DNA of 64,000 bases from Oopsacas minuta (GCA_024704765.1 JAKMXF010000018.1:30339-94338), one strand, 5' to 3'; shown: positions 33,634 to 54,323, counted from the stretch's first letter. The notes: a model not told the origin generated them from the letters alone. Numbers and translations are program-made.

Positions 33634-34326
33634 TTAAATTTGGATTTCCGGTTTGATAACACCTCTATACCATGCGACCTGTAGTAACACCATGAGGTCT
33701 AGAGTAACCTGTGTGCCTCCACAGACCAGGAACTGTATAGGTGTCTCTCTGATTATGAAATAACTGGTTTTATAGATGTCCCCGAATAGCCACATCATCA
33801 CCATGGAAACGGACATTCCTTGTGTCGATTTAGAACTCCAGTTGCCTAGTAACTGAGGTAGTCCCATTCCGGACTCCGTAACCAAGGCAACGTAACCTAG
33901 TACTGTGTAGTAACCATCTGTGTTTATGAGGAATGTTAAGAATGTTAAGAATGTGATTAATCCAATAGTGAAGGTAAGATAGTCTATGAACCTTGTCCAT
34001 CTCCAGAAGTGTTTATATAACCCTCTCCCCCAGATCCTCCTCTCCTCTCTCTCCCCCTCAGCACGTACACACACCCACATAACACCTAGCATAACTAGAA
34101 ACATGAAAATACTCTGGGCCAGTAACTGAGACTCAAATCTGACTCCATACCAGAAGAATAGTCTCACTGTATTTGCTATTAATAGTATCATGCAGGTTAA
34201 TGTTGAGAATCCCTTAGCACTCCCTCGCGTGTAGATCTTATAAGTCTGTGGAATGTAAGCCAATCCTCCGCCGAATATAATAAACGCAGAGCTGAGGTAT
34301 AACCCGGCACTCTTAATAACTTCCAT
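33634..34326 (-). CDS. SLC66A2: PQ-loop membrane protein (PQLC1/SLC66A2-like), single exon
   Basis: Two PQ loops (YIPQTYKIY, GLPQLLGNW), GFSTLTC, GMSVSMVMMWLFGDIYKT and multiple TM helices. Confidence 0.88.
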   Translation of the reverse strand: MEVIKSAGLYLSSAFIIFGGGLAYIPQTYKIYTRGSAKGFSTLTCMILLIANTVRLFFWYGVRFESQLLAQSIFMFLVMLGVMWVCVRAEGEREERRIWGRGLYKHFWRWTRFIDYLTFTIGLITFLTFLTFLINTDGYYTVLGYVALVTESGMGLPQLLGNWSSKSTQGMSVSMVMMWLFGDIYKTSYFIIRETPIQFLVCGGTQVTLDLMVLLQVAWYRGVIKPEIQI

Positions 34327-34547
34327 TATATCTTATTAATTCGTATTATTTGGTTTATATGAGTACTAATTCAATTTCTGTGCATATATTATGTGCTAGC
34401 TACTATCACTGAAGCGATCTATTAGCCAGTTATATAAGATAGATGAGAGGTGTTACTATAGTAATACACAGCTGGGTTATTGAGTGCGTCATAATGTATT
34501 ACAGAGTGTAATATTCGTTAGAGAAAGATGCGGCAGATAGCTGCTAT

Positions 34548-34583
34548 CTGATTGGCTGAGAGGAGGGAGGACAGGTATAAATA
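34548..34583 (+). promoter_or_regulatory. Inverted CCAAT box and TATA box upstream of the CAP-Gly gene (divergent from PQLC1)
   Basis: CTGATTGGCTG at 34548-34558 and TATAAATA at 34576-34583, 28 nt before ATG 34611. Confidence 0.55.
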
Positions 34584-34610
34584 GGAGGAGAGATAGGCTT
34601 TAGAACTGAA

Positions 34611-37600
34611 ATGAAACTCAATTCTTCTGCCAACAAACATCAGTGGAAATCAGTCCTAGCCTTTAGAGTATGTTTACTTTATTGTTTGTTTGTAAACAAT
34701 TTATTGTTGTTTATTTGTAGGAACCAAGTGGAATCCCCTCCCTACAACACCTTACTCATAACAGCTGTTCTTGTTCAAACTGCAAGCTGGCTACCAAGAA
34801 GTTAAGTAGAGGGAGTCCTCATAATGGAGGGCAGTGTCTGTCCAGACGAGCTGAGATTAACCTCAGACTGGGAGATCGTGTAGCATTTAAGGGTAAGACA
34901 GGTGAGTATCCTGTCCTGTGTGTCTATGACTAGTAATTGAGTTAATGCATTATTATAGGAATAGTGAGATATATGGGAGTAATGGATTCTAAGTTTGAGG
35001 ATGGAGATTTATTTGCTGGAATTAAGCTAGATGATCCTCTAGGGGATCATGATGGTGTTGTTAAGGGTAAGAGGTACTTCTCCTGTCCTGACAAGCATGG
35101 TATCATGGTACCAGCTGCTAGTGTAGCTATGTTACTACCTAGAGAGGTGAGAACCATTATATAATGTATTATTTTTATTATTATTATTATTGTAATTAGA
35201 TGAAGCAGAAGACTCAGGACGGATTGAACCTTCTTCCAAAAGACAAACAGTCTAAAGTTAGGTAATAACACCTTATAAATCAGCTGATAGATCAGCTGTT
35301 TTATTAATAATTTATTTGTAGCGCTACTCAGACTTCACCTATTTCCCCTCACGGTAGAAAGGGTGTTCCTACTAAACCCTCTCTGACCAACAGACTCCTA
35401 GCAGAGCTCCCAGACTCCAGATTCTATAGGTCTCCCTCTCCTGATTCAGAGCTAAAGGAACTCAGTGAGATATCCGACTGGGCAGCTAGTTGGGGAGGGG
35501 ATCATCAGGCCTGGGCTATGGCCGGGACTCTTGAGAGACTTAAGAGGGCTAATAGACGGGGTGCACAGGAACAGAACTGGCAGAGAGTACTGTTGTATTT
35601 GGAGCAGGAAATGCCTGATGAGTTGAGAGGAGAGCTAGAGACTATTCAGCAGCTCAGGGCTCAAATAGGAATAGTTAGAGAGGAGAGAGAGGTTATAGAG
35701 AGGGAAGGTAAAGATTCTCATATTGTTATCAGTAAGCAGGATATGTCACAGGAAATCGCTGATATTAACAATAAGATTCAAGTAAGTATATACTATTGTA
35801 TGTACAGTTATACTGTGTATTCTATCTGTATACTGTATGTAGGAAGAGATGCATAAATTCTCATTGCTACAGACAGCTATAGAAGAAGAGAAAAGGCTTA
35901 GAGAGAGTATTAAGGTATTTTAACTCTTAATAGTATTAGCTTATACTTGTACAGTGTATACCGGTTATAAGAAGTAGTAATACATGTTCTTAACACCGGT
36001 ATAAATATACAGGAATATATGGTAACAAGTTTGCAGAGGCATACACTGTATTCCCAGGACTGTTAATCTGTATATCTGACCTATAACCAAGAGAATATTT
36101 ATAGTCTTCTAATTAATCGTTAAAGTAATCTTAGAATTATCCAGGATACTTCTGTAGGAGCAGAGCTTAAAGAAGATGAGTACAGAGGAGCTAGACATAC
36201 TGGAGAGACAGCTAGCTCAACCTGTACACTGATATACTATATTATTGTGCTGTTATATATATGTAATGTTATCGCTATTAAACATGTATATGAGTTACAG
36301 TTATATCTAACACAGATGCATAGAAATGCCCTTTAGCATCGATTAACGGTAGTTAAGTGTATATGATTAATCATATGTGTAATCTTAACACATATAGCTA
36401 AATAGAGAGATGACAGACATAGACTTAGGTAATTACAATGATGACGAGCTAGAAGTACTAATGAAGAGGATAGCAATTGCTAAACAAAGGAAAGAGAAAA
36501 GAACTCCAGAGCCTTCATCTCCCCCTCTTATGAGAGGTAATCATACTCCAGAGACCTATGTAGAGGAATCTACAAACTATAATCACAGAGATAGAGATGA
36601 AAGTGTTAACTACAGACCAGATCCTGTAGAATACGTAGATAATAGCTATACACGTGATCACTATACTAAGGATAAAATCACTACCATAGAAGGTATGTAA
36701 TTGTAGAGGATTACTACTGGGAACATGTTCTCACTATTTTAATGCGTAGATAGTGATTCAGATGATTTAGAGAGTTTAGAGTCTTTCATTAATCAGAACT
36801 TAAGACCGGAACTATCAAATGAAGAATGGTAACTATAATTATTTGTTAATCAGTTGATCTTGTTAAATAATTCACATTCCAATCCAGGTTATTCGTATCT
36901 GCGTTATCTCATAAAACAGATCAAAGTAGGAAATGTAAAGTATCTGATTGGTTAAATATAGGATCAGAAGATCAGTTCGATGACATGCCGGATTATAAAC
37001 CTACAAGGAGAACCGGTATATTATATTATAAAAATATCTAATTTGATTAACACTAACATTCCATAATTACTGTAGTCCCCCCATAGATACGAACTTGTAC
37101 AGTAGGTATTCATTTATACCTTGTAGTCCACCTTCTCTCCCTATCCCACTTTCCTTAACACCTCCGAATGGTGTCCAGACTGAGCTAATCATCCCCTCAT
37201 TAACTCCAATCAGTCCATATTGTAGTTGTGGCGTCACTCTGTGTATCTGCCTGTAGTCTGTAGTCATGACGTAAGCAGCTAATCCCTCTTTGACCTAATA
37301 CGTTAGTATAATACACTAATTATTAATTAACTCCCAATAAAGTTAAATTGACTGTAATTACATTGTTAGCTAGATGAATAGCCTCTTCCTCTGTATCAAA
37401 TGCTCTCACAGGTATCACAGGTCCAAATGTCTCTTCATTCCATATATCCATATCCTCAGTTAGTCCTGATAAGAGAGTAGGTTGATAGAAATGTCCGTTA
37501 CCTATCTTATCCCCTCCCACTAGCACCTCTCCTCCTTTTTCTACACCGTCTGTAATGTGACGTGTTACCTTATCAACAGCTGATTGGTTTATGAGAGGAC

Positions 37601-40600
37601 CTAGCTCTGCCCCTTCTTCTAGTCCGTCTGCTACCCTCTTACCCTTAATCAGGTCTACACACCTCTCTAACACCTCTTCTATCCGGCTGGTGTGTACTAG
37701 TACTCTATTAGCACTGATACAGGTCTGTCCGTTGTTACGGAACTTAGTTGTGTTGATAGCACGCATGACTACCTCAATATCAGCTGATGGGAATATTATA
37801 AAGGGGGCATTACCGCCTAATTCTAAGGTTACCTTCTTAACAGTACTGCTACACAACTTGTATAGCTTCTTACCAACAACACAGCTCCCTACAGTGTATG
37901 CAGGTTATGAGAACACCCTTGAGAGCAGCAATACATGATCTTATAACCAGTATCTACTGTATTACCTGTAAATGATAGTCCCTGTATGTCTGGGTTGGTA
38001 CACATCTCCTCTCCCACTGCCGGGGTGCTAGACTTGTCTGACGTCACTACGTTAAACACCCCTCTAGGAATCCCTGCCCTATCTCCCAGCTCCGCTAGTG
38101 CCAGGGCAGACAGAGGGGTCTCTTCAGAAGGTTTGAGTACCACCGTGCATCCGGCTGCCAGAGCAGCAGCTGTCTTTCTCAGAGGTAGCAATACAGGGAA
38201 GTTCCATGAGGTTATGAAGGCACAGGCTCCTATAGGCTCTCTGTATAGTAAGCTTTGCGTCATGCCGGATTGTGTCGGTATAATTTCTCCGTATATACGC
38301 CTAGCTGCTTCGGAATACCACTATAATACACAGCAAATAATACAATACAGTAAATGCTACCACAATTGTGGAGACTACACAGTATATAAATTTTATATGA
38401 CACATTACCTCGAGGTAAGAGGCCCCGTAGTCAACCTCCCCTAGACCTTCCTTTAGGACCTTCCCTGATTCTAGCGTTATTAGTGTCCCCAGTGCATTCC
38501 TATGCTCCATAACCGTATCTAACCAGCGTCTCAACAACTGTCCTCTCTCATTTCCACTCTTTAGCCTCCAACCCAGCTGAGCAGTCCTAGCACAAGCTAT
38601 AGCATCCCTGATATCTGATTGGTTCATATCAGGTACTGATCCTATCTTCTCTAGGGTAGACGGATTAATGACGTCATATGATTTAGAGGATTTGATCCAT
38701 TCTCCATTCACATACGCCTGAGACTTTAATAGATGTGATACTGAGCCTAATGCACGCTGCATTCCTATTACACAACCTGGTTGCTAGGTTAATAACACTA
38801 TAATTATAGATTATCGCAGAACTCCTTCTCCATTGTCACGATACGCTCGTGTACCCAGAGCTCAATCCCCCCTCTTCAGCTCCAGGGGGCAGGACATGGA
38901 TACAGGAGGTCTATTTAAGATATCATCAGGTCCCAGTAGGTATCTGGAGAGGGTAGAGAAGAGGAGTCTCGCCTCACCACCCCTCCATGACCCCTCAGAT
39001 ATAAATAGTAAGTTATTATAATATTCTCATTAGTTATACCATAAGCTCTGGCTATATATACGAAATTATTGTTATAGGAGATTATGTAGCGGACACATCT
39101 CCGATAGACTCACCCATTAGACAGTCTCCTGACTGGGAGAGAGAGATCACCTCTTCCCCCAGGACAATAGACCAGATGACAGGACACAGATACTCCCCAC
39201 AGGTGTCATTATATAATTAGATTATACAATCATAAATTATAATCACATACCATATAGCGTTGTGAGATAAGTAACACCCGAGTTACCTAGTAGACGGCAG
39301 GAATGTGTCTACTTTTAGCTTGTTAATATTATTACACAATTTCTCTCATAATTACTCTTGTCTGCAATCATCTATTTTAAAATATAAAACCATTCTAGAA
39401 TCTACAGCGATTATAACACATATAACCTAGCTAGCCATAATCTTATAAATCCTTACAAATGTAAATATCTGACATAGATTAGACTCAATTCTTGTGAGTA
39501 AATAGCAGTTATACATTTATTAGAATTATGGTTAAGTTAATACACTCAATATATAAGTACTGTGTTAGGCTGTATTTAACTTGTACAATACAAATTGAAT
39601 TAGAATCAAACTGGACCACCCAGAGCATACACAGGTCCCTGAGGACCAGATCTCTAGCTTCCAGCAGTCTAGTGTATTCTTAACTTCCTTGCCTTATTGG
39701 CCATTATTACAGACTCAATTAAAGGAACATTTTACGATAATAAAGCAAGCTATATTACACGCAATACAATGCGAGGCTACAGACACTATTGGAATAATTG
39801 TGTCAGATATTCTGTTCTATGTCAGACGGTATAAGAAGTATTTCTCTAAACAAGATCATATAATGCTTATAGAAATCCTATACGATATGGTATGTAGGGA
39901 CCCCCTTCCTCCTCACGGTCTATCCGCCTGTCTAGTTGCACTCATCGACCTGCTCCTCCCCCAGAGACTGATCACCAGATCTGACCTCACTCTACGCTGG
40001 CGTCCCCTATACGATCTGTACCTCCGTATAAAGAAGGAGTCCATAACTAGAATGCACCCCTCTCTATGGGGGCTACTAGACCCCATCGTACAGCTAGCCG
40101 CCCTGGCATCCTCCTACTTCCCTGAAGAAGCTACAGCAGAGATCCTGAGAGAGCTATACCCCCAGATCCACCCCTCCCTCTCCTCTAACACATATATGCT
40201 TGTACTAACTCTACTGACCGCATTCCTACCCGTAGATGTACCTCCTCATGTATGGGGACTATGGTTTAATGACGTCACTAAGTTATGGTTAGGCTCTGGG
40301 GTTATACTACCTAAGGGGGAGTGTAGAGTCCTGTATCTCCTCTCTCGTCTGGCTCCTCGTACTGTCGGGAGAGTAGATTGGTCGCCACACTTGCATCAGC
40401 TGTTTGATCAGCTGTTGAGGAGTGTACACATTCCTGTAGGACCACTTAAATTCACATTCAAGTCTCGTACAGTTCTTCCTATACAGAAGTTCTCTAAGAT
40501 AATAGTGTTCTCAATATATCAGGGATCACAGACCCTATCTCATCTCAAACAGTTGATGCTTGCTTTAGAAACATTCTTCCATCCTTCTAATGACGGGAGA

Positions 40601-43600
40601 CATCTTAAGAATCTTATAACGCTAGTCACTACTCTGGTATCAGATTTTATGGTTCGTATAACCAGAGAGTCAGGGGTAAAACCTGTTCCTGCCTCTTTGC
40701 AGATACCCCCTGAGTTCCGATTGACCGAGGGGGATATCGATCAGTTCGTGACAACTGTCCTACCTTCTTTGAGACTAGCTCTCTTCACCAAGGAGGAGAG
40801 GTACCAGTTCCAAATAGCTGGGTGTCTGGGCCCCCTAAGCACAATAAGACCCCGTATGTTTGTTCCTGAAATGATTGAGGAGTGTAAGGAGGCTCTTGTC
40901 TCAGTGACAGAGCCCCATAGACTGACGTCACTGCTCAGCTGTTTATATTCTGTATCAGCTTGTCTTACTACAGGTCTGCCTGATTTCCCAGAGGGTCGCA
41001 CTTACGTCATCCCGTTACTACACGCTATACTACCTGGTATAGACGTTAATGACGCGTTTAAGACTGCTCTATCTCTCAAAGTAATCACCCAGCTGATCTC
41101 TGGAATACCATTGGTTGACTGTTCTAAGTCTCCGCCTATGAATAGCATCGGAAGAGAACTAGCAGCTCAGACCGCTCTTTTTGAGGATTTTATTCTGGAA
41201 TTTATTTCTAAAATGTTTCATTTCTTGCAGTGTGCTACCACTTCTGTAACTCTAGGAGAGCTGGAAGGAATGCAGACAGGTCCTCATATACATTCCATTG
41301 ATATAGGTATGTCGTTACAATCAAATATAGTGTTACTGTTCCCTGTTAGTCTATCAGTGGTCCTATCTTCTTGCCCTCTCTCCCTCTACGAGAGAGCTGT
41401 TTCTAAGATATTCCAGCTGACCTGTGGAATGTTTGCCTCTGTTGATAAGCCAGGCACCAGTCCCTATCCTGTAATACTATCCCATCTGACAGCTTGCCAA
41501 CACGGGAGTGATACAGCCCGTATGTTCTTTTCTCATTGTCTGCAGTGTATCAAGCGTGTAGCTTCTGAAATACAGCTGGAAAAGGAGGAGAGAGGGGATC
41601 CTGAGATTAAATGGAATCTGGAGCTTCTCTCCTCGGTGGTACAGTACGGGGCTAGACACGCCCTCTCTCATCTCTCTGACATAAGAGAGGTGTTAAGACT
41701 TACTCGATACTCTAAATGTAAGGAGATATACCAGATGTCCTCAGGACTACTTTGTGACGTAATCACTTGTCTCAGCGGTGTATACATTCTCCCTAAATAC
41801 CAATTCGGTGTAGATCTAGACCTCTCCCCCTCAGACAGGGACTATCTAGAGGATTGGGGTACATACTTCCAGAAGAATGAGGTCAGAGCTCAATGGCATA
41901 TTCCTAGCATCGAGGAAATAGAAGGAGTGGAGTCTCTATTACAAGAATTCTTGTTACCTGAATTATTAAAGATAAGAGAATTTGTATCAGGTTCTATAGA
42001 GCTATCACGTGATGAGTTACAGAATATATTAACACTTATAGAGTCAGGATTCCTTGCTTCAGCCTTTAGATTCATAGAAGTTACTGACCCTCCTCTCTCT
42101 GAATATGATCAGTTAATTACTGAGGATCTTGTGTACCTAACAAGACACATTATAACATGTAACAGGCCTGTGTACAGGTTAGAATCCTATAAAATGGATG
42201 AATTATGTCCTCTCATACATTCTCTGTCTGTTAAGCTGTTTGCAGAGAGACAGCATGAGACAGAATCCATGAGACTCCTGGTGTCTATCATTCAATCACT
42301 CCTATCTCCCTCTCAGACCGTGTCCTGCTGGAGTCAGCTGAGATTATTCAAGATAGATAAACACATCATGTCAGTCAGGACAGCTCATAAACGCCTCTAC
42401 TCTCAGCTATACTTACTCTACCGTCTGGAGTCTACACACGATTGTGTAGGCTTAGAAGATCACGTTGACATCGTAACTGTTTCTAAGGAATGTCTGCTTA
42501 TTGACTTGTTTAACCTAGCCACCTCTGAGTACGTCATAACCCGTCAGTATGCTCAGTACCAACTGGACAAGTGCTTCACACGGTACCTGTTTAGTAGGAG
42601 GTTCATGTTCCCACATATACTGCCCCTTCTAGGAGGAGACACACCCAGAGAGAGACTCAAGGGGGCACTCCGCACCCTCCTCTACAACAAGAATCTATTT
42701 TTAGAATACATATGTTGTAGACCTGATCTCATATCACAACTAATTCCATCTCTCCTATCCTGTAACCATACAGACAAGCAGCCTATTATAGATCTCCTAT
42801 ACTCCGTATTTGGTGTTATACGACAGCTGGTCGGTCTCCTGGACCCTGAACTAACCAGATTCTCAACTGAGACACAGAGGACTGCCCTGGAGAGGTTGGG
42901 TGTTCCTCTCCCAAGTGAGACCCTCGTAAGAGTCATGTCAGTCCGTGATAGCAAGCGTGATAGTGATATGAAGGCTTACCTGGTATTTGTGTCCGATCTG
43001 ATTAAATTCATCAAGGCCCCCTCTTCCTCTCTCTTCTTTGAGTTTGCTGTCTCCATTCTCTCTTCCCTTCCTCACCCGACCCTCCCTCGTCCTCCTGAGC
43101 TAATTCCTACCCTCCTCCCCCTCTTGGTACACGATACAGTTAGTGTCAGATACACAGCTATGTCTATCCTTGAGAGTATTTTAAAGTTTAAGAGGAATTC
43201 TTACAAGAAAATACTGCTGGTAACGATTGAACAGGTAATGGATAGTGTAGCATCTCTCAAACTGGAGCCAAGCAACACTAGTGTGAAATTGGAATTCGGA
43301 GAATGTGAAGAGAACAGATGGCTCTGTATTATGGAGGATGACCTGACAAGAGAAGCTATGTCGCAATCAGAATGGAATGCTATTACATTTGTAGATAAGA
43401 TGTACGTCGGTTACGTCAGACCCTGGCCTAGCGACTTACAAATATTTGCACCAGCTAAGGACCAGAGCATCAGTACAGATTATGATAGAGAGGACAGACA
43501 TATCATCAGCTGGTTCCAGGATGAGAAAAACGCTAAGACCCTGATTACATTCCTCTCGTTGGAAGAGAGGAAGAATGCAGAGGAATTCCGTATACATGTA

Positions 43601-45711
43601 GAAGAGGTATTCAAGGCTTTGGCTAAGAACTACGGAGCTGAATCAGTGAGATTATTCAGTGATCAACTGACTAAACTTATGACGTCACAACAGGAGACTG
43701 AGCAGAGATTAGGCTTAGAACTAGCAGCTGGTATTCTCATGGGGTCTAAGCACTGGCGGTGGGAACAAGTCTCAGAGCTTGAGAAGATTTTGGCACCAGC
43801 GTTCTTCCAGGGCATAAAGGTAATAAGTAAGGAGACCTCTCCTAATTGGGCTACATTCCTGAGCCGTATTTTATTCAAGAGAGATCCTAGACGCTTCTTC
43901 TGGCTGTGGAATGGTCTGTTAAAGGACCTGATGGATCCATCAGATTCCTGTTTCACTAATGCTATGAGATTACTGCTATGTGATTGTGCTGTATTTTACG
44001 GTTCTTGGAGAATACCCGGTTTTAAGCACGCTCTGTTAAAGAGATTAATTCCTCATCTATCTAGTCCCTACCAGATGCTGCGATCTAGGATTGCTAGATT
44101 TCTGGTCACCGTGTTCTCGGAAGAGGGTCCTCTTGCTGTTTCCCTCTACTCCCCCTCTAGACAGCTGTTCCTCTCCAAGTTAGAGGTACTCTCCCTATCT
44201 CAGGGTAAATTATCATCTCTAGACACTCCTGATAGAGACAGAGTGTTATGTGAAATTAAGGTGGTAGCTGAATTCCTGACTAGGACAGCTAAACTACTCA
44301 GATTCGCACCAGAGCTGCTGTTGCTAGGGGAGACCATTCTGACACATAGGAATGCTATAGAAGAGGATGAATTAACTCACATACTGGACTCCCTTGCTCA
44401 CTCCTTATCTCTCCTAGAAATACCGCATCAAGCAGTACCTACACTAATTGCTGTATTCCAGAAAATGCCATATGAAGAGAATTGGCAGACTAAACTAGGC
44501 AAGCTGTACCTCTTCCAAGTTCTGACATTTGGGAATTTATTTACTGTGCTGTCACACGGGGCCCTGGTTGTATCAGCTATTAGAAATGTACTCCTGTCTC
44601 TGCTGGGAGATCAAAGGGTAGAGGTTAGGGACCAGGCGGCTGAGTCTCTATCCGGATTGGTTCGATGCGGATTCTACTCCAATGATGACGTCATATCGTT
44701 TGTACAGGATTTCACTGAGCAGTTGGGGCCCCCGCCTCAAGGGCGCAGAGCTCGGAAGCGTATAGAGTCTGACCTACTGGCTAAGAAGCACTCTGGACTA
44801 TTGGGACTGGGTGCTATAGTCCTCGCTTATCCCTACTCGATCCCTCAGTTCCTCCCGACAGTCCTCATGCTCGTGGGAGCATTCCTACAAGCGACACCTC
44901 CCCTCCAAGGGTCCGCTAAACATGTCCTCTCAGAATTCAAGCGGACACATTGGGACCAGTGGGAGGTACACAGGGTTGCCTTCTCTGACGCTCAGCTGGC
45001 TGACCTACGGGGGATGTTGGTATCTCCAACTTACTATGTTTGATTTTGTGAGATTAGTTTTGTAATTTAATTAAAATCTCTGTTGTATTTGTTATTCATT
45101 CATTAATGGTAGTATACTGCTTATTATATACATTCCTAATGACTATTGTCGTTACTAGGCTCCTGTCATCAGCTCCTCCCTCCGTCACGGTAACGCTCTC
45201 CCTCTTAGACAGACCCCTTCCCCTAAGTTTTCTTCTGGACAGATTGCTAGTCCCCTCGAGAGGGTATCCTCTCCAGGGTACCAGTTGCCCCCTCATAGAC
45301 ACATGACACCTACTCATGATGATCCTACACAGGTACCTATCCGTGTTTAGTGTAACGATTACTGTACTCAGTGTTTGTATTTACTTGTTTGTTTAGGAAT
45401 TAGTTTCATCAAGGGAGAGACCAGTAGCAGAGCCTAGAGTAAGCTATACAGATACTACAATACGTATTAGTATGTTATAGTTATAATATAGATATCAATG
45501 ATACAGCAGAGAAGTATAGCTAGTCCACAGACCAGAATGCCTGTAAGACAGAATATAGCTAGACCTCAAATCCGCACTCCACAAGGTTTGTTTGTTTGTT
45601 TGTTTGTTGTGTATATATAAATTGTTGTTATTCACAGCTCTGAGCGGCAGAACACCCCGTTCCTTACAAGCTCCCTCTCCTATCAGAGCCCGCTCAAGCA
45701 GAGACAGCTGA
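34611..45711 (+). CDS. CAP-Gly + coiled-coil protein with long S/P/R-rich tail; host gene for two nested genes
   Basis: CAP-Gly motif [31 protein letters not shown] and coiled-coil exons. The 3' exon chain is phase-compatible: 36750-36828, 36888-37015, 38810-39007, 39078-39202, 45159-45332, 45397-45438, 45492-45585, 45638-45711. Confidence 0.7.
37067..38762 (-). CDS. ALDH5A1: Succinate-semialdehyde dehydrogenase (NAD+), nested antisense
   Basis: [23 protein letters not shown], catalytic ELGGNAPF and [30 protein letters not shown]. Confidence 0.93.
39528..45043 (+). CDS. PSME4: Proteasome activator PA200/Blm10; essentially one 5.4-kb exon
   Basis: 1784-codon ORF with [70 protein letters not shown] and the C-terminal proteasome-gating motif SPTYYV. 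The start is inferred from a micro-exon ATG GTT AA (39528-39535) spliced to 39604; this start is uncertain. Confidence 0.93.
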
Positions 45712-53059: not shown

Positions 53060-54323
53060 ATGTTGAGTAGAATGCTCACTAAGTTACCATGGCAACCAAT
53101 CCCCTCGTTTAGAATGGCATCTTCAATTGAACAGCTGAAGGTGTGTCTGGTCGGTTCTGGGAACTGGGGTAGCGCAGTGGCGAAGATAATCGGGAATAAT
53201 GTGACACGGTTAGAGGGGTTCTCTCGTGACGTCACTATGTATGTCTATGAAGAGATAGTGGATGGAGAGAAACTTAGCGAAGTTATAAACTCACGTCATG
53301 AGAATGTTAAGTATCTCCCTGGGATAAAGCTACCGACTAACGTACGTGCGGAGCCTGACCTCGTCTCCTCGGCCAGTAACGCAGACATCTTGGTATTTGT
53401 AGTTCCACACCAATTCGTTCCGGGAATATGCGCAAAGCTGAAAGGTAGCATTAAGCCAGGGGCTGTGGGGGTGTCACTGATTAAGGGATTAGATGCGAAT
53501 GTTGGGGGCAAATTGGAACTGGTCTCAGAGACAATTGCGAGTTCTCTGCAGATTCCAATGAGTGTGCTTATGGGAGCTAACATAGCAACCGAGGTTGCTC
53601 AGGAATGTCATTGCGAGGCAACCCTTGGATGCAAGAACAGTGCGCAAGGTATGTGTATCATGACGTCACGACATATCAACTTAGCACAAATATATTTATT
53701 AGGTTCTATGCTGAAGAGAATTTTCAGTACTGATTACTTCAAGATAGAAGTAGTGGATGACCTGGAGGCCGTAGAGATGTGTGGGGCGCTTAAGAATGTT
53801 GTAGCTTGTGCTGCTGGGTTTGCAGATGGAATGGATTTAGGTTCCAATACCAAAGCAGCAATAATCAGAATAGGTAAGTAATACTAATAAATTGATAATT
53901 CACGATAACACCTCGCATTATTCCCTGGATACCTGGATGGGGGTAGGAATGTAATTATACTTCATTAAAGGTCTAGTTGAGATGATGAGCATCATAAAGA
54001 GTTTGTTTCCTGATTCAAAGAAGAAAACATACTTTCAGTCATGCGGCGTTGCTGACCTAATCACAACCTGCTTCGGAGGGAGGAACAGACGAATTTCTGA
54101 GGCATTTGTCAGGACTGGTAAGTCCCTGGCTGTACTTGAAGCAGAAATGCTGAACGGACAGAAACTACAGGGACCAGCCACCGCACAGCTGATTTATAAG
54201 ATTTTAGAGAAAGAGGCGTTCAAGATAGAAGTCCCACTATTCGTGAAAGTCTACCAAATTTGTTTTGAGGGAATCTCCCCTCGCTCCCTTTTAGAAATAT
54301 TTAGTATAGTTTCTAATCTCTGA
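53060..54323 (+). CDS. GPD1: NAD-dependent glycerol-3-phosphate dehydrogenase
   Basis: GSGNWGSAVA, ENVKYLPG, FVVPHQF, SLIKG, GANIATEVA, GALKNVVACAAGF, GSNTKAAIIRIG, SCGVADLITTCFGGRNRR, GQKLQG. Confidence 0.96.

What the first reader, a model, noticed from the sequence alone, without database searches (positions are those of the whole stretch)
34611..45711. Russian-doll locus: an 11-kb CAP-Gly gene appears to host two essential housekeeping genes in its introns
Seen: exons at 38810-39202 and 45159-45711 begin with splice acceptors, have no start codon of their own and encode similar S/P/R-rich sequence. They join the CAP-Gly exons with every phase compatible: 37015 G|AT 38810, then 39202 CAG|GCT 45159. 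Intron 37016-38809 then contains the whole ALDH5A1 CDS antisense, with only about 50 nt spare at each side. Its start (38762) is so close to host exon 38810 that the SSADH promoter/5'UTR probably overlaps host coding sequence. Inference: one transcription unit encloses two unrelated genes, which requires coordinated transcription and splicing.
Basis: partly seen in the sequence, partly recalled or inferred. Interest (0 to 1): 0.85.

Follow-up and report, generated by a model that had tools for sequence, protein, structure and literature searches.

The report
Two genes nested in sponge orphan gene
In the glass sponge Oopsacas minuta, RNA shows a small orphan gene (not its CAP-Gly neighbour) spliced across two long introns that each hold a complete gene, an arrangement kept in four related sponges but of a kind already reported for glass sponges.

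Summary
An RNA run of this organism (Oopsacas minuta) has one contig joining 36888-37015 to 38810-39007. Another runs from 39202 into a 15-mer found only at 45160. So one spliced transcript skips the antisense SSADH/ALDH5A1 gene (intron 37016-38809) and the same-strand, single-exon PA200/PSME4 gene (intron 39203-45158).

The host is probably not the CAP-Gly gene:
- The CAP-Gly ORF (364 aa) ends at a stop at 36230-32. That stop, after '..VH', is kept in all five glass sponges compared.
- The host ORF starts at ATG 36410. It has 9 exons and encodes a 398-aa S/R/P-rich orphan protein. An AG lies 0-4 nt before its ATG in all five species.
- CAP-Gly exons have roughly 10-40 times the RNA depth of host exons.

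Every host exon lies in the same order around both guests in four related sponge contigs, with conserved splice sites, although synonymous sites are saturated.

The public annotation misses the nesting. It truncates the host to 171 aa and fuses host exons to PSME4.

Nested genes are already reported as abundant in glass sponges (Francis et al. 2023), and this scan noted a similar case on other DNA of this genome. This is a new, well-supported member of a known kind.

Side finding: PA200 has CTG where three relatives have the start ATG.

The parts
34611..36232 (+). Upstream neighbour, not the host: CAP-Gly gene, 7 exons, 364 aa. Exons are 34611-34667, 34721-34901, 34959-35146, 35200-35261, 35322-35781, 35843-35914 and 36158-36232. 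The stop TGA is at 36230-32.
   Evidence: Pfam CAP_GLY, E = 1.7e-16. The model translates to 364 aa, equal to the NCBI model at the same coordinates. The C-terminus '..VH' plus stop is conserved in L002-L005.
36410..37015 (+). Host gene exons 1-3: 36410-36692, 36750-36828 and 36888-37015. The start ATG is at 36410, preceded by the acceptor-like sequence atatag/aaatag.
   Evidence: RNA joints 36690>36748, 36827>36887 and 37014>38809. The NCBI 171-aa model P0017 covers these exons but reads on to a stop at 37039-41. The donor CG|GTA is conserved in 4 species.
37016..38809 (+). Host intron 3, 1794 nt, GT..AG. It contains the whole antisense SSADH gene.
   Evidence: It is skipped in the X4 RNA contig record 26, depth 955, with 128 nt on the shorter side.
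37067..38762 (-). Guest 1: succinate-semialdehyde dehydrogenase (ALDH5A1-like). It has 4 exons and 487 aa in the NCBI model. An AATAG acceptor lies 2 nt before its ATG.
   Evidence: Pfam Aldedh. The best NCBIfam match is TIGR01780 SSADH. RNA joints CT..AC at 37292>37360, 37887>37965 and 38320>38409.
38810..39202 (+). Host exons 4 and 5: 38810-39007 and 39078-39202. They are S/P/R-rich.
   Evidence: The junction 39007|39078 is fixed by two RNA overhangs and is in frame. tblastn finds them between ALDH and PA200 in L002-L005. The donor CAG|GT and the RQSPDWE motif are conserved.
39203..45158 (+). Host intron 5, 5956 nt, GT..AG. It contains the whole same-strand PA200 gene.
   Evidence: The RNA loose end at 39203 continues with a 15-mer that is unique at 45160. 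The acceptor CTAG|GC and the upstream CTAAT-like element are conserved in 4 species.
39586..39603 (+). Conserved 18-nt element CAATACAAATTGAATTAG ending in an AG. It is the presumed (trans-)splice acceptor of PA200.
   Evidence: It is identical or near-identical in L002 and L003 and partly kept in L004. The exact form occurs once in the window; counting up to 3 mismatches there are 3 matches against 0.17 expected by chance. X4 depth rises from 147 to 1206 at the 39600 bin edge.
39604..45043 (+). Guest 2: proteasome activator PA200/Blm10 (PSME4), a single exon. The frame is open from 39599, with CTG at 39611-13 where relatives have the start ATG. The stop is at 45041-43 and the C-terminus is ..YYV.
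   Evidence: Pfam HEAT_PSME4_mid, HEAT_PSME4 and PSME4_C. Human PSME4 residue 56 aligns with ORF residue 19. Relatives are 77-81% identical.
45069..45074 (+). ATTAAA, the presumed PA200 poly(A) signal. It lies inside the host intron, about 85 nt before the host acceptor.
   Evidence: ATTAAA is conserved at the same place after the PA200 stop in L002-L004. Its function is inferred.
45159..45711 (+). Host exons 6-9: 45159-45332, 45397-45438, 45492-45585 and 45638-45711. The stop TGA is at 45709-11.
   Evidence: The start of exon 6 is fixed by the RNA overhang. The full 9-exon CDS is 1197 nt, in frame, 398 aa, with all introns GT..AG. Exon 6 is found in L002-L005 and exons 8-9 in L004. The donor CCACAAG|GT is conserved in 4 species.

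Best explanation
The locus is a host/nested-gene arrangement in the glass sponge Oopsacas minuta.

The host is a 9-exon gene at 36410-45711 on the + strand. It encodes a 398-aa, serine/arginine/proline-rich, probably disordered protein that is known only from close glass-sponge relatives. It lies 177 nt downstream of a separate, far more abundantly expressed CAP-Gly gene. Six host introns are 52-70 nt long. The other two are 1794 nt and 5956 nt, and each holds a complete gene: SSADH/ALDH5A1 on the opposite strand, and single-exon PA200/PSME4 on the same strand.

Shown:
- The host mRNA is cis-spliced across both guests.
- SSADH is spliced as its own antisense mRNA.

Inferred:
- PA200 mRNA starts at the conserved AATTAG acceptor at 39603, probably by receiving a spliced leader.
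- PA200 mRNA ends at the conserved ATTAAA at 45069.
- If so, a precursor running through intron 5 is processed either into host mRNA (intron removed whole) or into PA200 mRNA. PA200 may also have its own promoter in the 400-nt AT-rich stretch 39203-39600.
- SSADH is transcribed from its own promoter near host exon 4, and its 5' end is trimmed at an acceptor 2 nt before its ATG.
For: RNA:
- Run X4 is RNA, and one contig carries 36827>36887, 37014>38809 and 39007>39078 at depth 955.
- That depth accounts for essentially all coverage of 38800-38999 (bin depth 917).
- The loose end at 39203 matches the unique 15-mer at 45160.
- There is no joint from 39202 into the PA200 ORF.

Coding:
- The nine exons give one 1197-nt ORF with GT..AG introns throughout.

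Conservation:
- All host exons are found by tblastn in the same order around ALDH and PA200 in four other sponge contigs, L002-L005.
- The donors after exons 3, 5 and 8 and the acceptor before exon 6 are conserved.
- pN is 0.22-0.38 against pS of 0.49-0.89, mostly 0.6-0.87, so synonymous sites are near saturation.

Separation from the CAP-Gly gene:
- The stop after '..VH' is conserved in 5 of 5 species, with TAA in L005.
- The host ATG has an AG 0-4 nt upstream in 5 of 5 species.
- NCBI models these as separate genes.
- X4 depth is 20-46k over 34600-35800 and about 0.7-2.7k over host exons.

Guests:
- Pfam, NCBIfam and PDB matches identify both.
- SSADH has its own CT..AC joints.
- PA200 depth steps up at 39600.

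Context: nested genes and a spliced leader are reported for glass sponges (PMC10282587).
Against: - The second long junction rests on a 15-nt overhang of one contig, because the single reads call could not span 39202-45159.
- Exons 7-9 have no RNA evidence here.
- Contig word depths are a poor measure of expression, and some real joints were listed only through minor contigs. For example, 34899>34957 appears at depth 12. The weak 35912>36156 joint (depth 19) therefore does not prove that the CAP-Gly and host mRNAs are separate.
- A donor (GT of the Val codon) and an in-frame acceptor that would fuse the CAP-Gly and host ORFs exist in the window and, by inspection, in L002 and L003.
- No spliced leader was seen on PA200, SSADH or the host in the output shown.
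- The host protein has no known domain or distant homologue, so its translation is inferred from frame conservation only.
Confidence: 0.8

Rival explanations
1. A single 11-kb CAP-Gly gene (34611-45711) is the host. An intron at 36224-36398 removes the stop at 36230, so the CAP-Gly domain and the S/P/R-rich tail form one protein.
For: - A GT at 36224 and an AG at 36397-98 would join the frames (..AQP|LNREM..).
- Joint 35912>36156 shows that transcripts carrying CAP-Gly exons reach 36158 and beyond.
- The two genes are co-directional and only 177 nt apart.
Against: - No RNA contig shows this joint, and depth over 36200-36399 (1081) equals exon depth.
- Val-His-stop is conserved in 5 of 5 species, with a different stop codon in one. 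This argues that the stop is read.
- By inspection of the sequence shown, L004 has no stop-free in-frame acceptor.
- Depth differs 10-40 fold between the two parts.
- NCBI models two genes.
Confidence: 0.1
2. The deposited annotation is right and there is no nesting. On this view the 171-aa gene ends at 37041, exons 38896-39202 are the 5' coding exons of PSME4 (a 1994-aa product), and 45159-45711 is a PSME4 tail or UTR.
For: - NCBI gene calls on JAKMXF010000018.1.
- PA200 has no in-frame ATG before residue 85, so a predictor needs an upstream ATG.
- Several in-frame AGs lie between 39626 and 39668.
Against: - The RNA contig joins 37014>38809, and the 39203 loose end goes to 45160.
- No joint from 39202 to 396xx is listed, although both sides lie inside the laid stretch.
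- Relatives L002, L003 and L005 have their own ATG at the head of PA200, just after a conserved acceptor.
- Human PSME4 aligns from the start of the ORF and has no such extension.
Confidence: 0.03
3. The long junctions are real, but the distal exons are non-coding. They would be by-products of read-through in an operon-type, trans-splicing genome. The functional product would be the 171-aa protein, or the distal exons would act as a UTR.
For: - The distal part is low-complexity with no domain.
- It evolves fast: 40-66% amino-acid identity, against 76-92% for most of the CAP-Gly gene (its short exons 6-7 are 39-75%).
Against: - The frame stays open over 233 codons in six exons, and all four RNA-defined junctions keep phase.
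- pN is well below pS.
- Splice sites and motifs such as RQSPDWE, GHRYSPQ and IARPQIRxPQ are conserved despite saturated synonymous sites.
- The spliced contig accounts for nearly all depth over exon 4.
Confidence: 0.05

Closest known systems
Nested (intronic) genes of glass sponges, as counted in Aphrocallistes vastus (Francis et al. 2023, PMC10282587)
   Same: Complete, often single-exon genes sit inside introns of other genes in a very compact hexactinellid genome. The paper reports 2432 such genes (12.4%), many of them conserved between A. vastus and O. minuta. It notes that only 83 were identified in the O. minuta annotation and that the count depends heavily on the annotation method.
   Different: This particular locus is not described there as far as I could read. 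One small orphan host carries two guests on opposite strands in two different introns. The public O. minuta models get it wrong: the host is truncated and host exons are fused to PSME4.
Host/nested gene pairs of mammals and flies (e.g. PMC11694760, PMC3192792)
   Same: A guest gene lies wholly inside a host intron, and the host is spliced across it. Same-strand guests bring an internal poly(A) site that can compete with host splicing.
   Different: Here the host introns are otherwise 52-70 nt, so the guests make up nearly all of the long introns, with only 47-51 nt spare around SSADH. The genome also uses spliced-leader trans-splicing, so a same-strand guest could be cut out of the host precursor rather than needing its own promoter.
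Spliced-leader trans-spliced operons (nematodes, tunicates). Within this scan, the 'three-gene train inside the ARMH1 intron' on another piece of the same genome (s1-242589)
   Same: Co-directional genes have short spacers: 177 nt between the CAP-Gly stop and the host ATG, and about 85 nt from the PA200 ATTAAA to the next acceptor. AG acceptors abut the start codons.
   Different: A classical operon is a linear train. Here the 'downstream cistron' (PA200) lies inside an intron of the gene that flanks it on both sides. No leader was seen on these genes in the output available to me.

Membership tests
Host/nested gene pair (gene within an intron) | The guest's whole coding sequence lies inside a single intron of the host. 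| tested here: met
   The SSADH CDS 37067-38762 lies inside intron 37016-38809. The PA200 frame 39599-45043 lies inside intron 39203-45158.
Host/nested gene pair (gene within an intron) | The host exons on both sides of the guest are joined in mature RNA. | tested here: met
   The X4 contig has joint 37014>38809 at depth 955. The loose end at 39203 matches the unique 15-mer at 45160. The second junction rests on a 15-nt overhang only.
Host/nested gene pair (gene within an intron) | The guest is expressed as an mRNA of its own, not as host exons. | tested here: inconclusive
   SSADH meets this, with its own antisense CT..AC joints at depth 1700-2300. For PA200, depth steps from 147 to 1206 at 39600 and no joint to host exons is listed, but its 5' end and any leader were not seen.
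   The CAP-Gly ORF stops at 36230-32 and the stop is conserved in 5 of 5 species. No RNA joint removes it.
Spliced-leader trans-spliced operon | A spliced leader is added at the acceptor in front of the downstream cistron. | not testable with these tools
   The single read-laying run showed only 24 of 186 loose ends, and none lay at 36405, 39604 or 38764. AG acceptors abutting start codons are present and conserved.
Spliced-leader trans-spliced operon | Co-directional genes are separated by short spacers and share one precursor. | tested here: inconclusive
   The spacers are 177 nt and about 85 nt. An unspliced contig covers 39174-39631 at depth 147, and RNA depth is continuous over 36200-36400. 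A shared precursor is not proven.
PA200/Blm10 (PSME4) proteasome activator | PSME4 mid, HEAT and C-terminal domains over about 1800 aa, with a C-terminal Tyr-Tyr-X tail. | tested here: met
   Pfam PF16507 (2.7e-59), PF23096 (8.3e-47) and PF11919 (1.3e-25). phmmer matches human PSME4 structures at 1.6e-19 for the first 200 aa. The ORF ends ..PTYYV.
Succinate-semialdehyde dehydrogenase (ALDH5A1) | The best match within the aldehyde dehydrogenase superfamily is the SSADH subfamily. | tested here: met
   TIGR01780 SSADH is the top hit for both exon pieces tested (190 and 133 bits). Whole-protein cut-offs cannot be reached by exon pieces.

The most novel reading that the evidence does not exclude
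Intron 5 works as a 'nested operon'. PA200 has no promoter of its own and is cut out of the host's precursor by spliced-leader addition at the conserved AATTAG acceptor and cleavage at ATTAAA. Each precursor molecule would then yield either the orphan host mRNA or PA200 mRNA, coupling proteasome-activator output to splicing of the host. In addition, PA200 in O. minuta and one relative starts translation at a CUG in good context (AAACUGG), or at an AUG donated by the leader, because the ancestral ATG has been lost.
Probability: 0.3. Interest if true: 0.55.

Novelty: new member of a known kind. Interest (0 to 1): 0.3.

Why it matters
- It corrects three public gene models of O. minuta. The host is truncated to 171 aa, PSME4 is inflated to 1994 aa with foreign exons, and the nesting is missed.
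- It gives a concrete, RNA-supported example of the under-annotated nesting that Francis et al. suspected for this genome.
- It shows that such nesting can persist across lineages whose synonymous sites are saturated, even when the host is a fast-evolving orphan.
- The same-strand guest has an internal poly(A) signal 85 nt before the host acceptor. This makes a convenient test case for how a trans-splicing animal chooses between cis-splicing over a gene and releasing that gene.
- For specialists the general phenomenon is not surprising.

Tried and rejected
- A word-indexed homologue search with host exon 1 found nothing. The 171-aa public model falls just outside the tool's length window.
- A profile of exon 1 from four species, searched against 1.84 billion representatives, found only the public 171-aa model and one close relative. 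The other hits were repeat matches. The host therefore could not be assigned to a family, and no transcript-derived full-length orthologue was available.
- Looking up ORF 53060-53878 to see the public annotation right of 44326 failed. How the 1994-aa PSME4 model is built beyond its start at 38896 remains a guess.
- My brute-force enumeration of distal splice sites was uninformative and had an off-by-one in the acceptor index. It was replaced by a model based on phase, intron size and conservation.
- The bacterial promoter/terminator scan of 39150-39700 is irrelevant to a eukaryote.
- I rejected treating contig depths as expression levels beyond order of magnitude. I also rejected the weak 35912>36156 joint as proof that the CAP-Gly and host mRNAs are separate, because another obligatory joint (34899>34957) was likewise listed only at depth 12.
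Only a low-complexity stretch, 35161-35202, was skipped.
Full report
**What the window is.** An exact-protein look-up of the PQ-loop ORF at 33637-34326 places the window on contig JAKMXF010000018.1 of assembly GCA_024704765.1. Earlier notes of this scan name that genome as the glass sponge Oopsacas minuta. The window is compact, about 40% G+C, and has introns of 50-70 nt. In the finding's span, Pfam finds a CAP-Gly domain (34964-35164, +). It also finds an aldehyde dehydrogenase on the minus strand (37323-38762) and a 1784-codon single ORF with all three PSME4/PA200 domains (39689-45040, +). The dehydrogenase matches the SSADH subfamily TIGR01780 best. The first 200 residues of the PA200 ORF match human PSME4 structures, with ORF residue 19 aligned to human residue 56.

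**RNA test of the two long junctions.** Four runs of one sample hold the stretch. When laid on 34400-40399, X1-X3 behave as DNA, giving unspliced contigs. X4 behaves as RNA, giving eleven canonical joints: GT..AG for + strand genes and CT..AC for the antisense dehydrogenase.
- One 390-nt X4 contig (record 26, depth 955) carries three junctions. These are 36827>36887, 37014>38809 (skipping 1794 nt, with 128 nt on the shorter side) and an overhang that fixes 39007|39078.
- The bin depth over 38800-38999 is 917. This spliced contig therefore accounts for essentially all RNA over exon 38810-39007.
- A loose end at 39203 continues CTCCTGTCATCAGCT. That 15-mer occurs exactly once in the 64-kb window, at 45160.
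- No joint from 39202 to anywhere in 39203-40399 is listed.

The first rests on a long contig and the second on a 15-nt overhang. A stretch spanning both ends of the 5956-nt intron with useful anchors would have exceeded the 6000-letter limit.

**The gene model.** With the RNA-defined boundaries, the following exons read as one frame with no stop: 36410-36692, 36750-36828, 36888-37015, 38810-39007, 39078-39202 and 45159-45332. Phase, the local intron size (52-64 nt) and conservation give three more exons: 45397-45438, 45492-45585 and 45638-45711. The total is a 1197-nt CDS of 398 aa, with GT..AG at all eight introns.

The protein is 13% Ser, 11% Arg and 11% Pro (16, 13 and 14% in the distal 233 residues). 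It has no Pfam or NCBIfam domain. BLASTP gives E = 0.11, with only R[RQ]TPSP and LERV shared.

**Is the CAP-Gly gene the host?** Probably not.
- The RNA-supported CAP-Gly exons, ending with the splice 35914>36158, translate to 364 aa. They stop at TGA 36230-32 after ..RQLAQPVH.
- The deposited annotation has the same 364-aa gene at 34611-36232, and a separate 171-aa gene at 36410-37041.
No X4 contig shows that joint. Depth over 36200-36399 is 1081, the same level as the exons downstream.
- In four related sponge contigs the CAP-Gly ORF also ends ..VH-stop, once with TAA instead of TGA. The next ORF starts with an ATG that has an AG 0-4 nt upstream, and the spacer varies from about 110 to about 500 nt.
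- X4 depth is 20-46k over 34600-35800, against about 0.7-2.7k over 36200-37000 and 0.9k over 38800-39200.

Depth from contigs is crude. One obligatory CAP-Gly joint (34899>34957) was listed only at depth 12, so I do not lean on the weak 35912>36156 joint (depth 19). A minor fused isoform cannot be excluded. By inspection, an in-frame donor/acceptor pair exists in the window, L002 and L003, but not in L004. I put about 0.1 on the fused reading.

**Comparative evidence.** The PA200 ORF found four proteins of 77-81% identity in ENA assemblies. Their contigs (L002-L005) share the gene order PQ-loop (-), CAP-Gly (+), aldehyde dehydrogenase (-), PA200 (+), aminotransferase (+), glutathione synthetase (-).
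- tblastn places host exons 1-3 before the dehydrogenase, exons 4-5 between it and PA200, and exon 6 just after PA200 in all four. Exons 8-9 follow in L004.
- The donor after exon 3 (CG|GTA) and the donor after exon 5 (CAG|GT, preceded by a conserved ..GHRYSPQ) are conserved. So are the acceptor before exon 6 (CTAG|GC with a CTAAT-like element upstream) and the donor CCACAAG|GT after exon 8. Flanking intron sequence is not conserved.
- Synonymous sites are near saturation (pS 0.49-0.89, mostly 0.6-0.87). pN is 0.22-0.38 for host exons and 0.08-0.13 for the CAP-Gly gene. These values carry the upward bias of alignments chosen by protein similarity.

The dehydrogenase lies in the same host intron in all five species. 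In O. minuta and L004 it is packed to within about 50 nt on both sides. The nesting is therefore old and maintained, and the host frame is under constraint.

**Host identity.** Exon 1 has a conserved 45-residue head followed by variable YRQEQP-like repeats in two relatives. A profile of it, searched against 1.84 billion representatives, found only the public 171-aa model (P0017) and one close relative. The host is a lineage-restricted orphan.

**The guests.** SSADH has three introns confirmed by RNA. On its own strand an AATAG acceptor lies 2 nt before the ATG. If a leader is added there, the mature 5'UTR need not overlap host exon 4, although the promoter or outron probably does.

PA200:
- Its frame opens at 39599, just inside a conserved 18-nt element ending in AATTAG at 39603. 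The exact form is unique in the window.
- RNA depth steps from 147 (an unspliced contig covering 39174-39631) to 1206 at the 39600 bin edge.
- Where L002, L003 and L005 have the start ATG a few bases after that acceptor, O. minuta and L004 have CTG (39611-13, context AAACTGG).
- The next two ATGs are out of frame. The first in-frame ATG (39863) would remove 84 conserved residues. The three DNA runs and the RNA run show no variant there.
- This missing ATG probably explains why the public model starts PSME4 at ATG 38896, inside host exon 4, and reaches 1994 aa.
- After the PA200 stop an ATTAAA is conserved in all species compared, about 85 nt before the host acceptor.

**Mechanism.**
- Shown: the host is cis-spliced over both guests, and SSADH is an independent antisense mRNA.
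- Inferred: PA200 mRNA begins at the 39603 acceptor and ends after ATTAAA, inside the host intron and on the host strand. A precursor running through intron 5 can then give either host mRNA or PA200 mRNA, but not both. PA200 may instead, or also, have a promoter in 39203-39600.

I could not see a spliced leader here. Glass-sponge leaders are reported by Francis et al.. Another follow-up in this scan reports a leader on same-strand intronic guests elsewhere in this genome (s1-242589), which I did not test.

**Comparison with what is known.** Francis et al. 2023 (PMC10282587) count 2432 nested genes (12.4%) in Aphrocallistes vastus and call many of them conserved. They list only 83 for O. minuta and stress that the annotation method strongly affects such counts. 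The O. minuta genome paper does not mention nesting. Host/nested pairs are also well described in mammals.

This locus is therefore a new, well-documented member of a known kind, not a new kind. Its particular points are:
- two guests of opposite orientation in one small orphan host;
- conservation across saturated divergence;
- an internal same-strand poly(A) signal close to the host acceptor;
- the lost ATG of PA200;
- wrong public gene models.

**Verdict.** Interest is modest, at 0.3.

Noticed in passing
window 39604-39863: PA200/PSME4 has no AUG at its head. CTG at 39611-13 (context AAACTGG) sits where three related sponges have the start ATG, and one close relative (L004) also has CTG. 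The first two downstream ATGs are out of frame, and the first in-frame ATG is 84 codons in. This suggests CUG initiation or an AUG donated by a spliced leader.
   Followed up: partly
window 36410-37041 and 38896-45043 (L001 7286-7917 and 1-5431): The public gene models disagree with the RNA. The host is truncated to 171 aa by reading through the donor at 37015. PSME4 is modelled as 1994 aa starting at ATG 38896, inside host exon 4.
   Followed up: partly
window 34600-36200: The CAP-Gly gene has about 10-40 times the RNA contig depth of the host gene 177 nt downstream. Its last intron (35915-36157, 243 nt) is retained in a depth-87 contig, which would end the protein early (..RESIKVF). In relative L004 the same intron is only about 48 nt.
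   Followed up: partly
window 35995-36021, also near 36317, 36378 and 37923-37962: Short stretches have many-fold excess depth and alternative continuations in the DNA runs. For example, 31-mers reach depth 1450-1850 against a baseline of 91-362. These are interspersed repeat fragments inside the CAP-Gly last intron, the spacer and an SSADH intron. They may be related to the introner-like elements noted elsewhere in this genome.
   Followed up: no
window 34400-34646: An RNA contig of the minus-strand PQ-loop gene (1258 nt, depth 432) runs up to 34646. That is 320 nt beyond its ATG and into the first exon of the CAP-Gly gene, so the two divergent genes overlap at their 5' ends, or the contig is precursor RNA.
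   Followed up: no
L002 4482-5108 and L003 6527-6970: Host exon 1 carries expanded tandem YRQEQP-like repeats in two relatives. These are absent from O. minuta and L004.
   Followed up: no
window 34807: The assembly has T where two of the three DNA runs have C, while the third DNA run and the RNA run agree with the assembly. This is probably a polymorphism within the sample.
   Followed up: no
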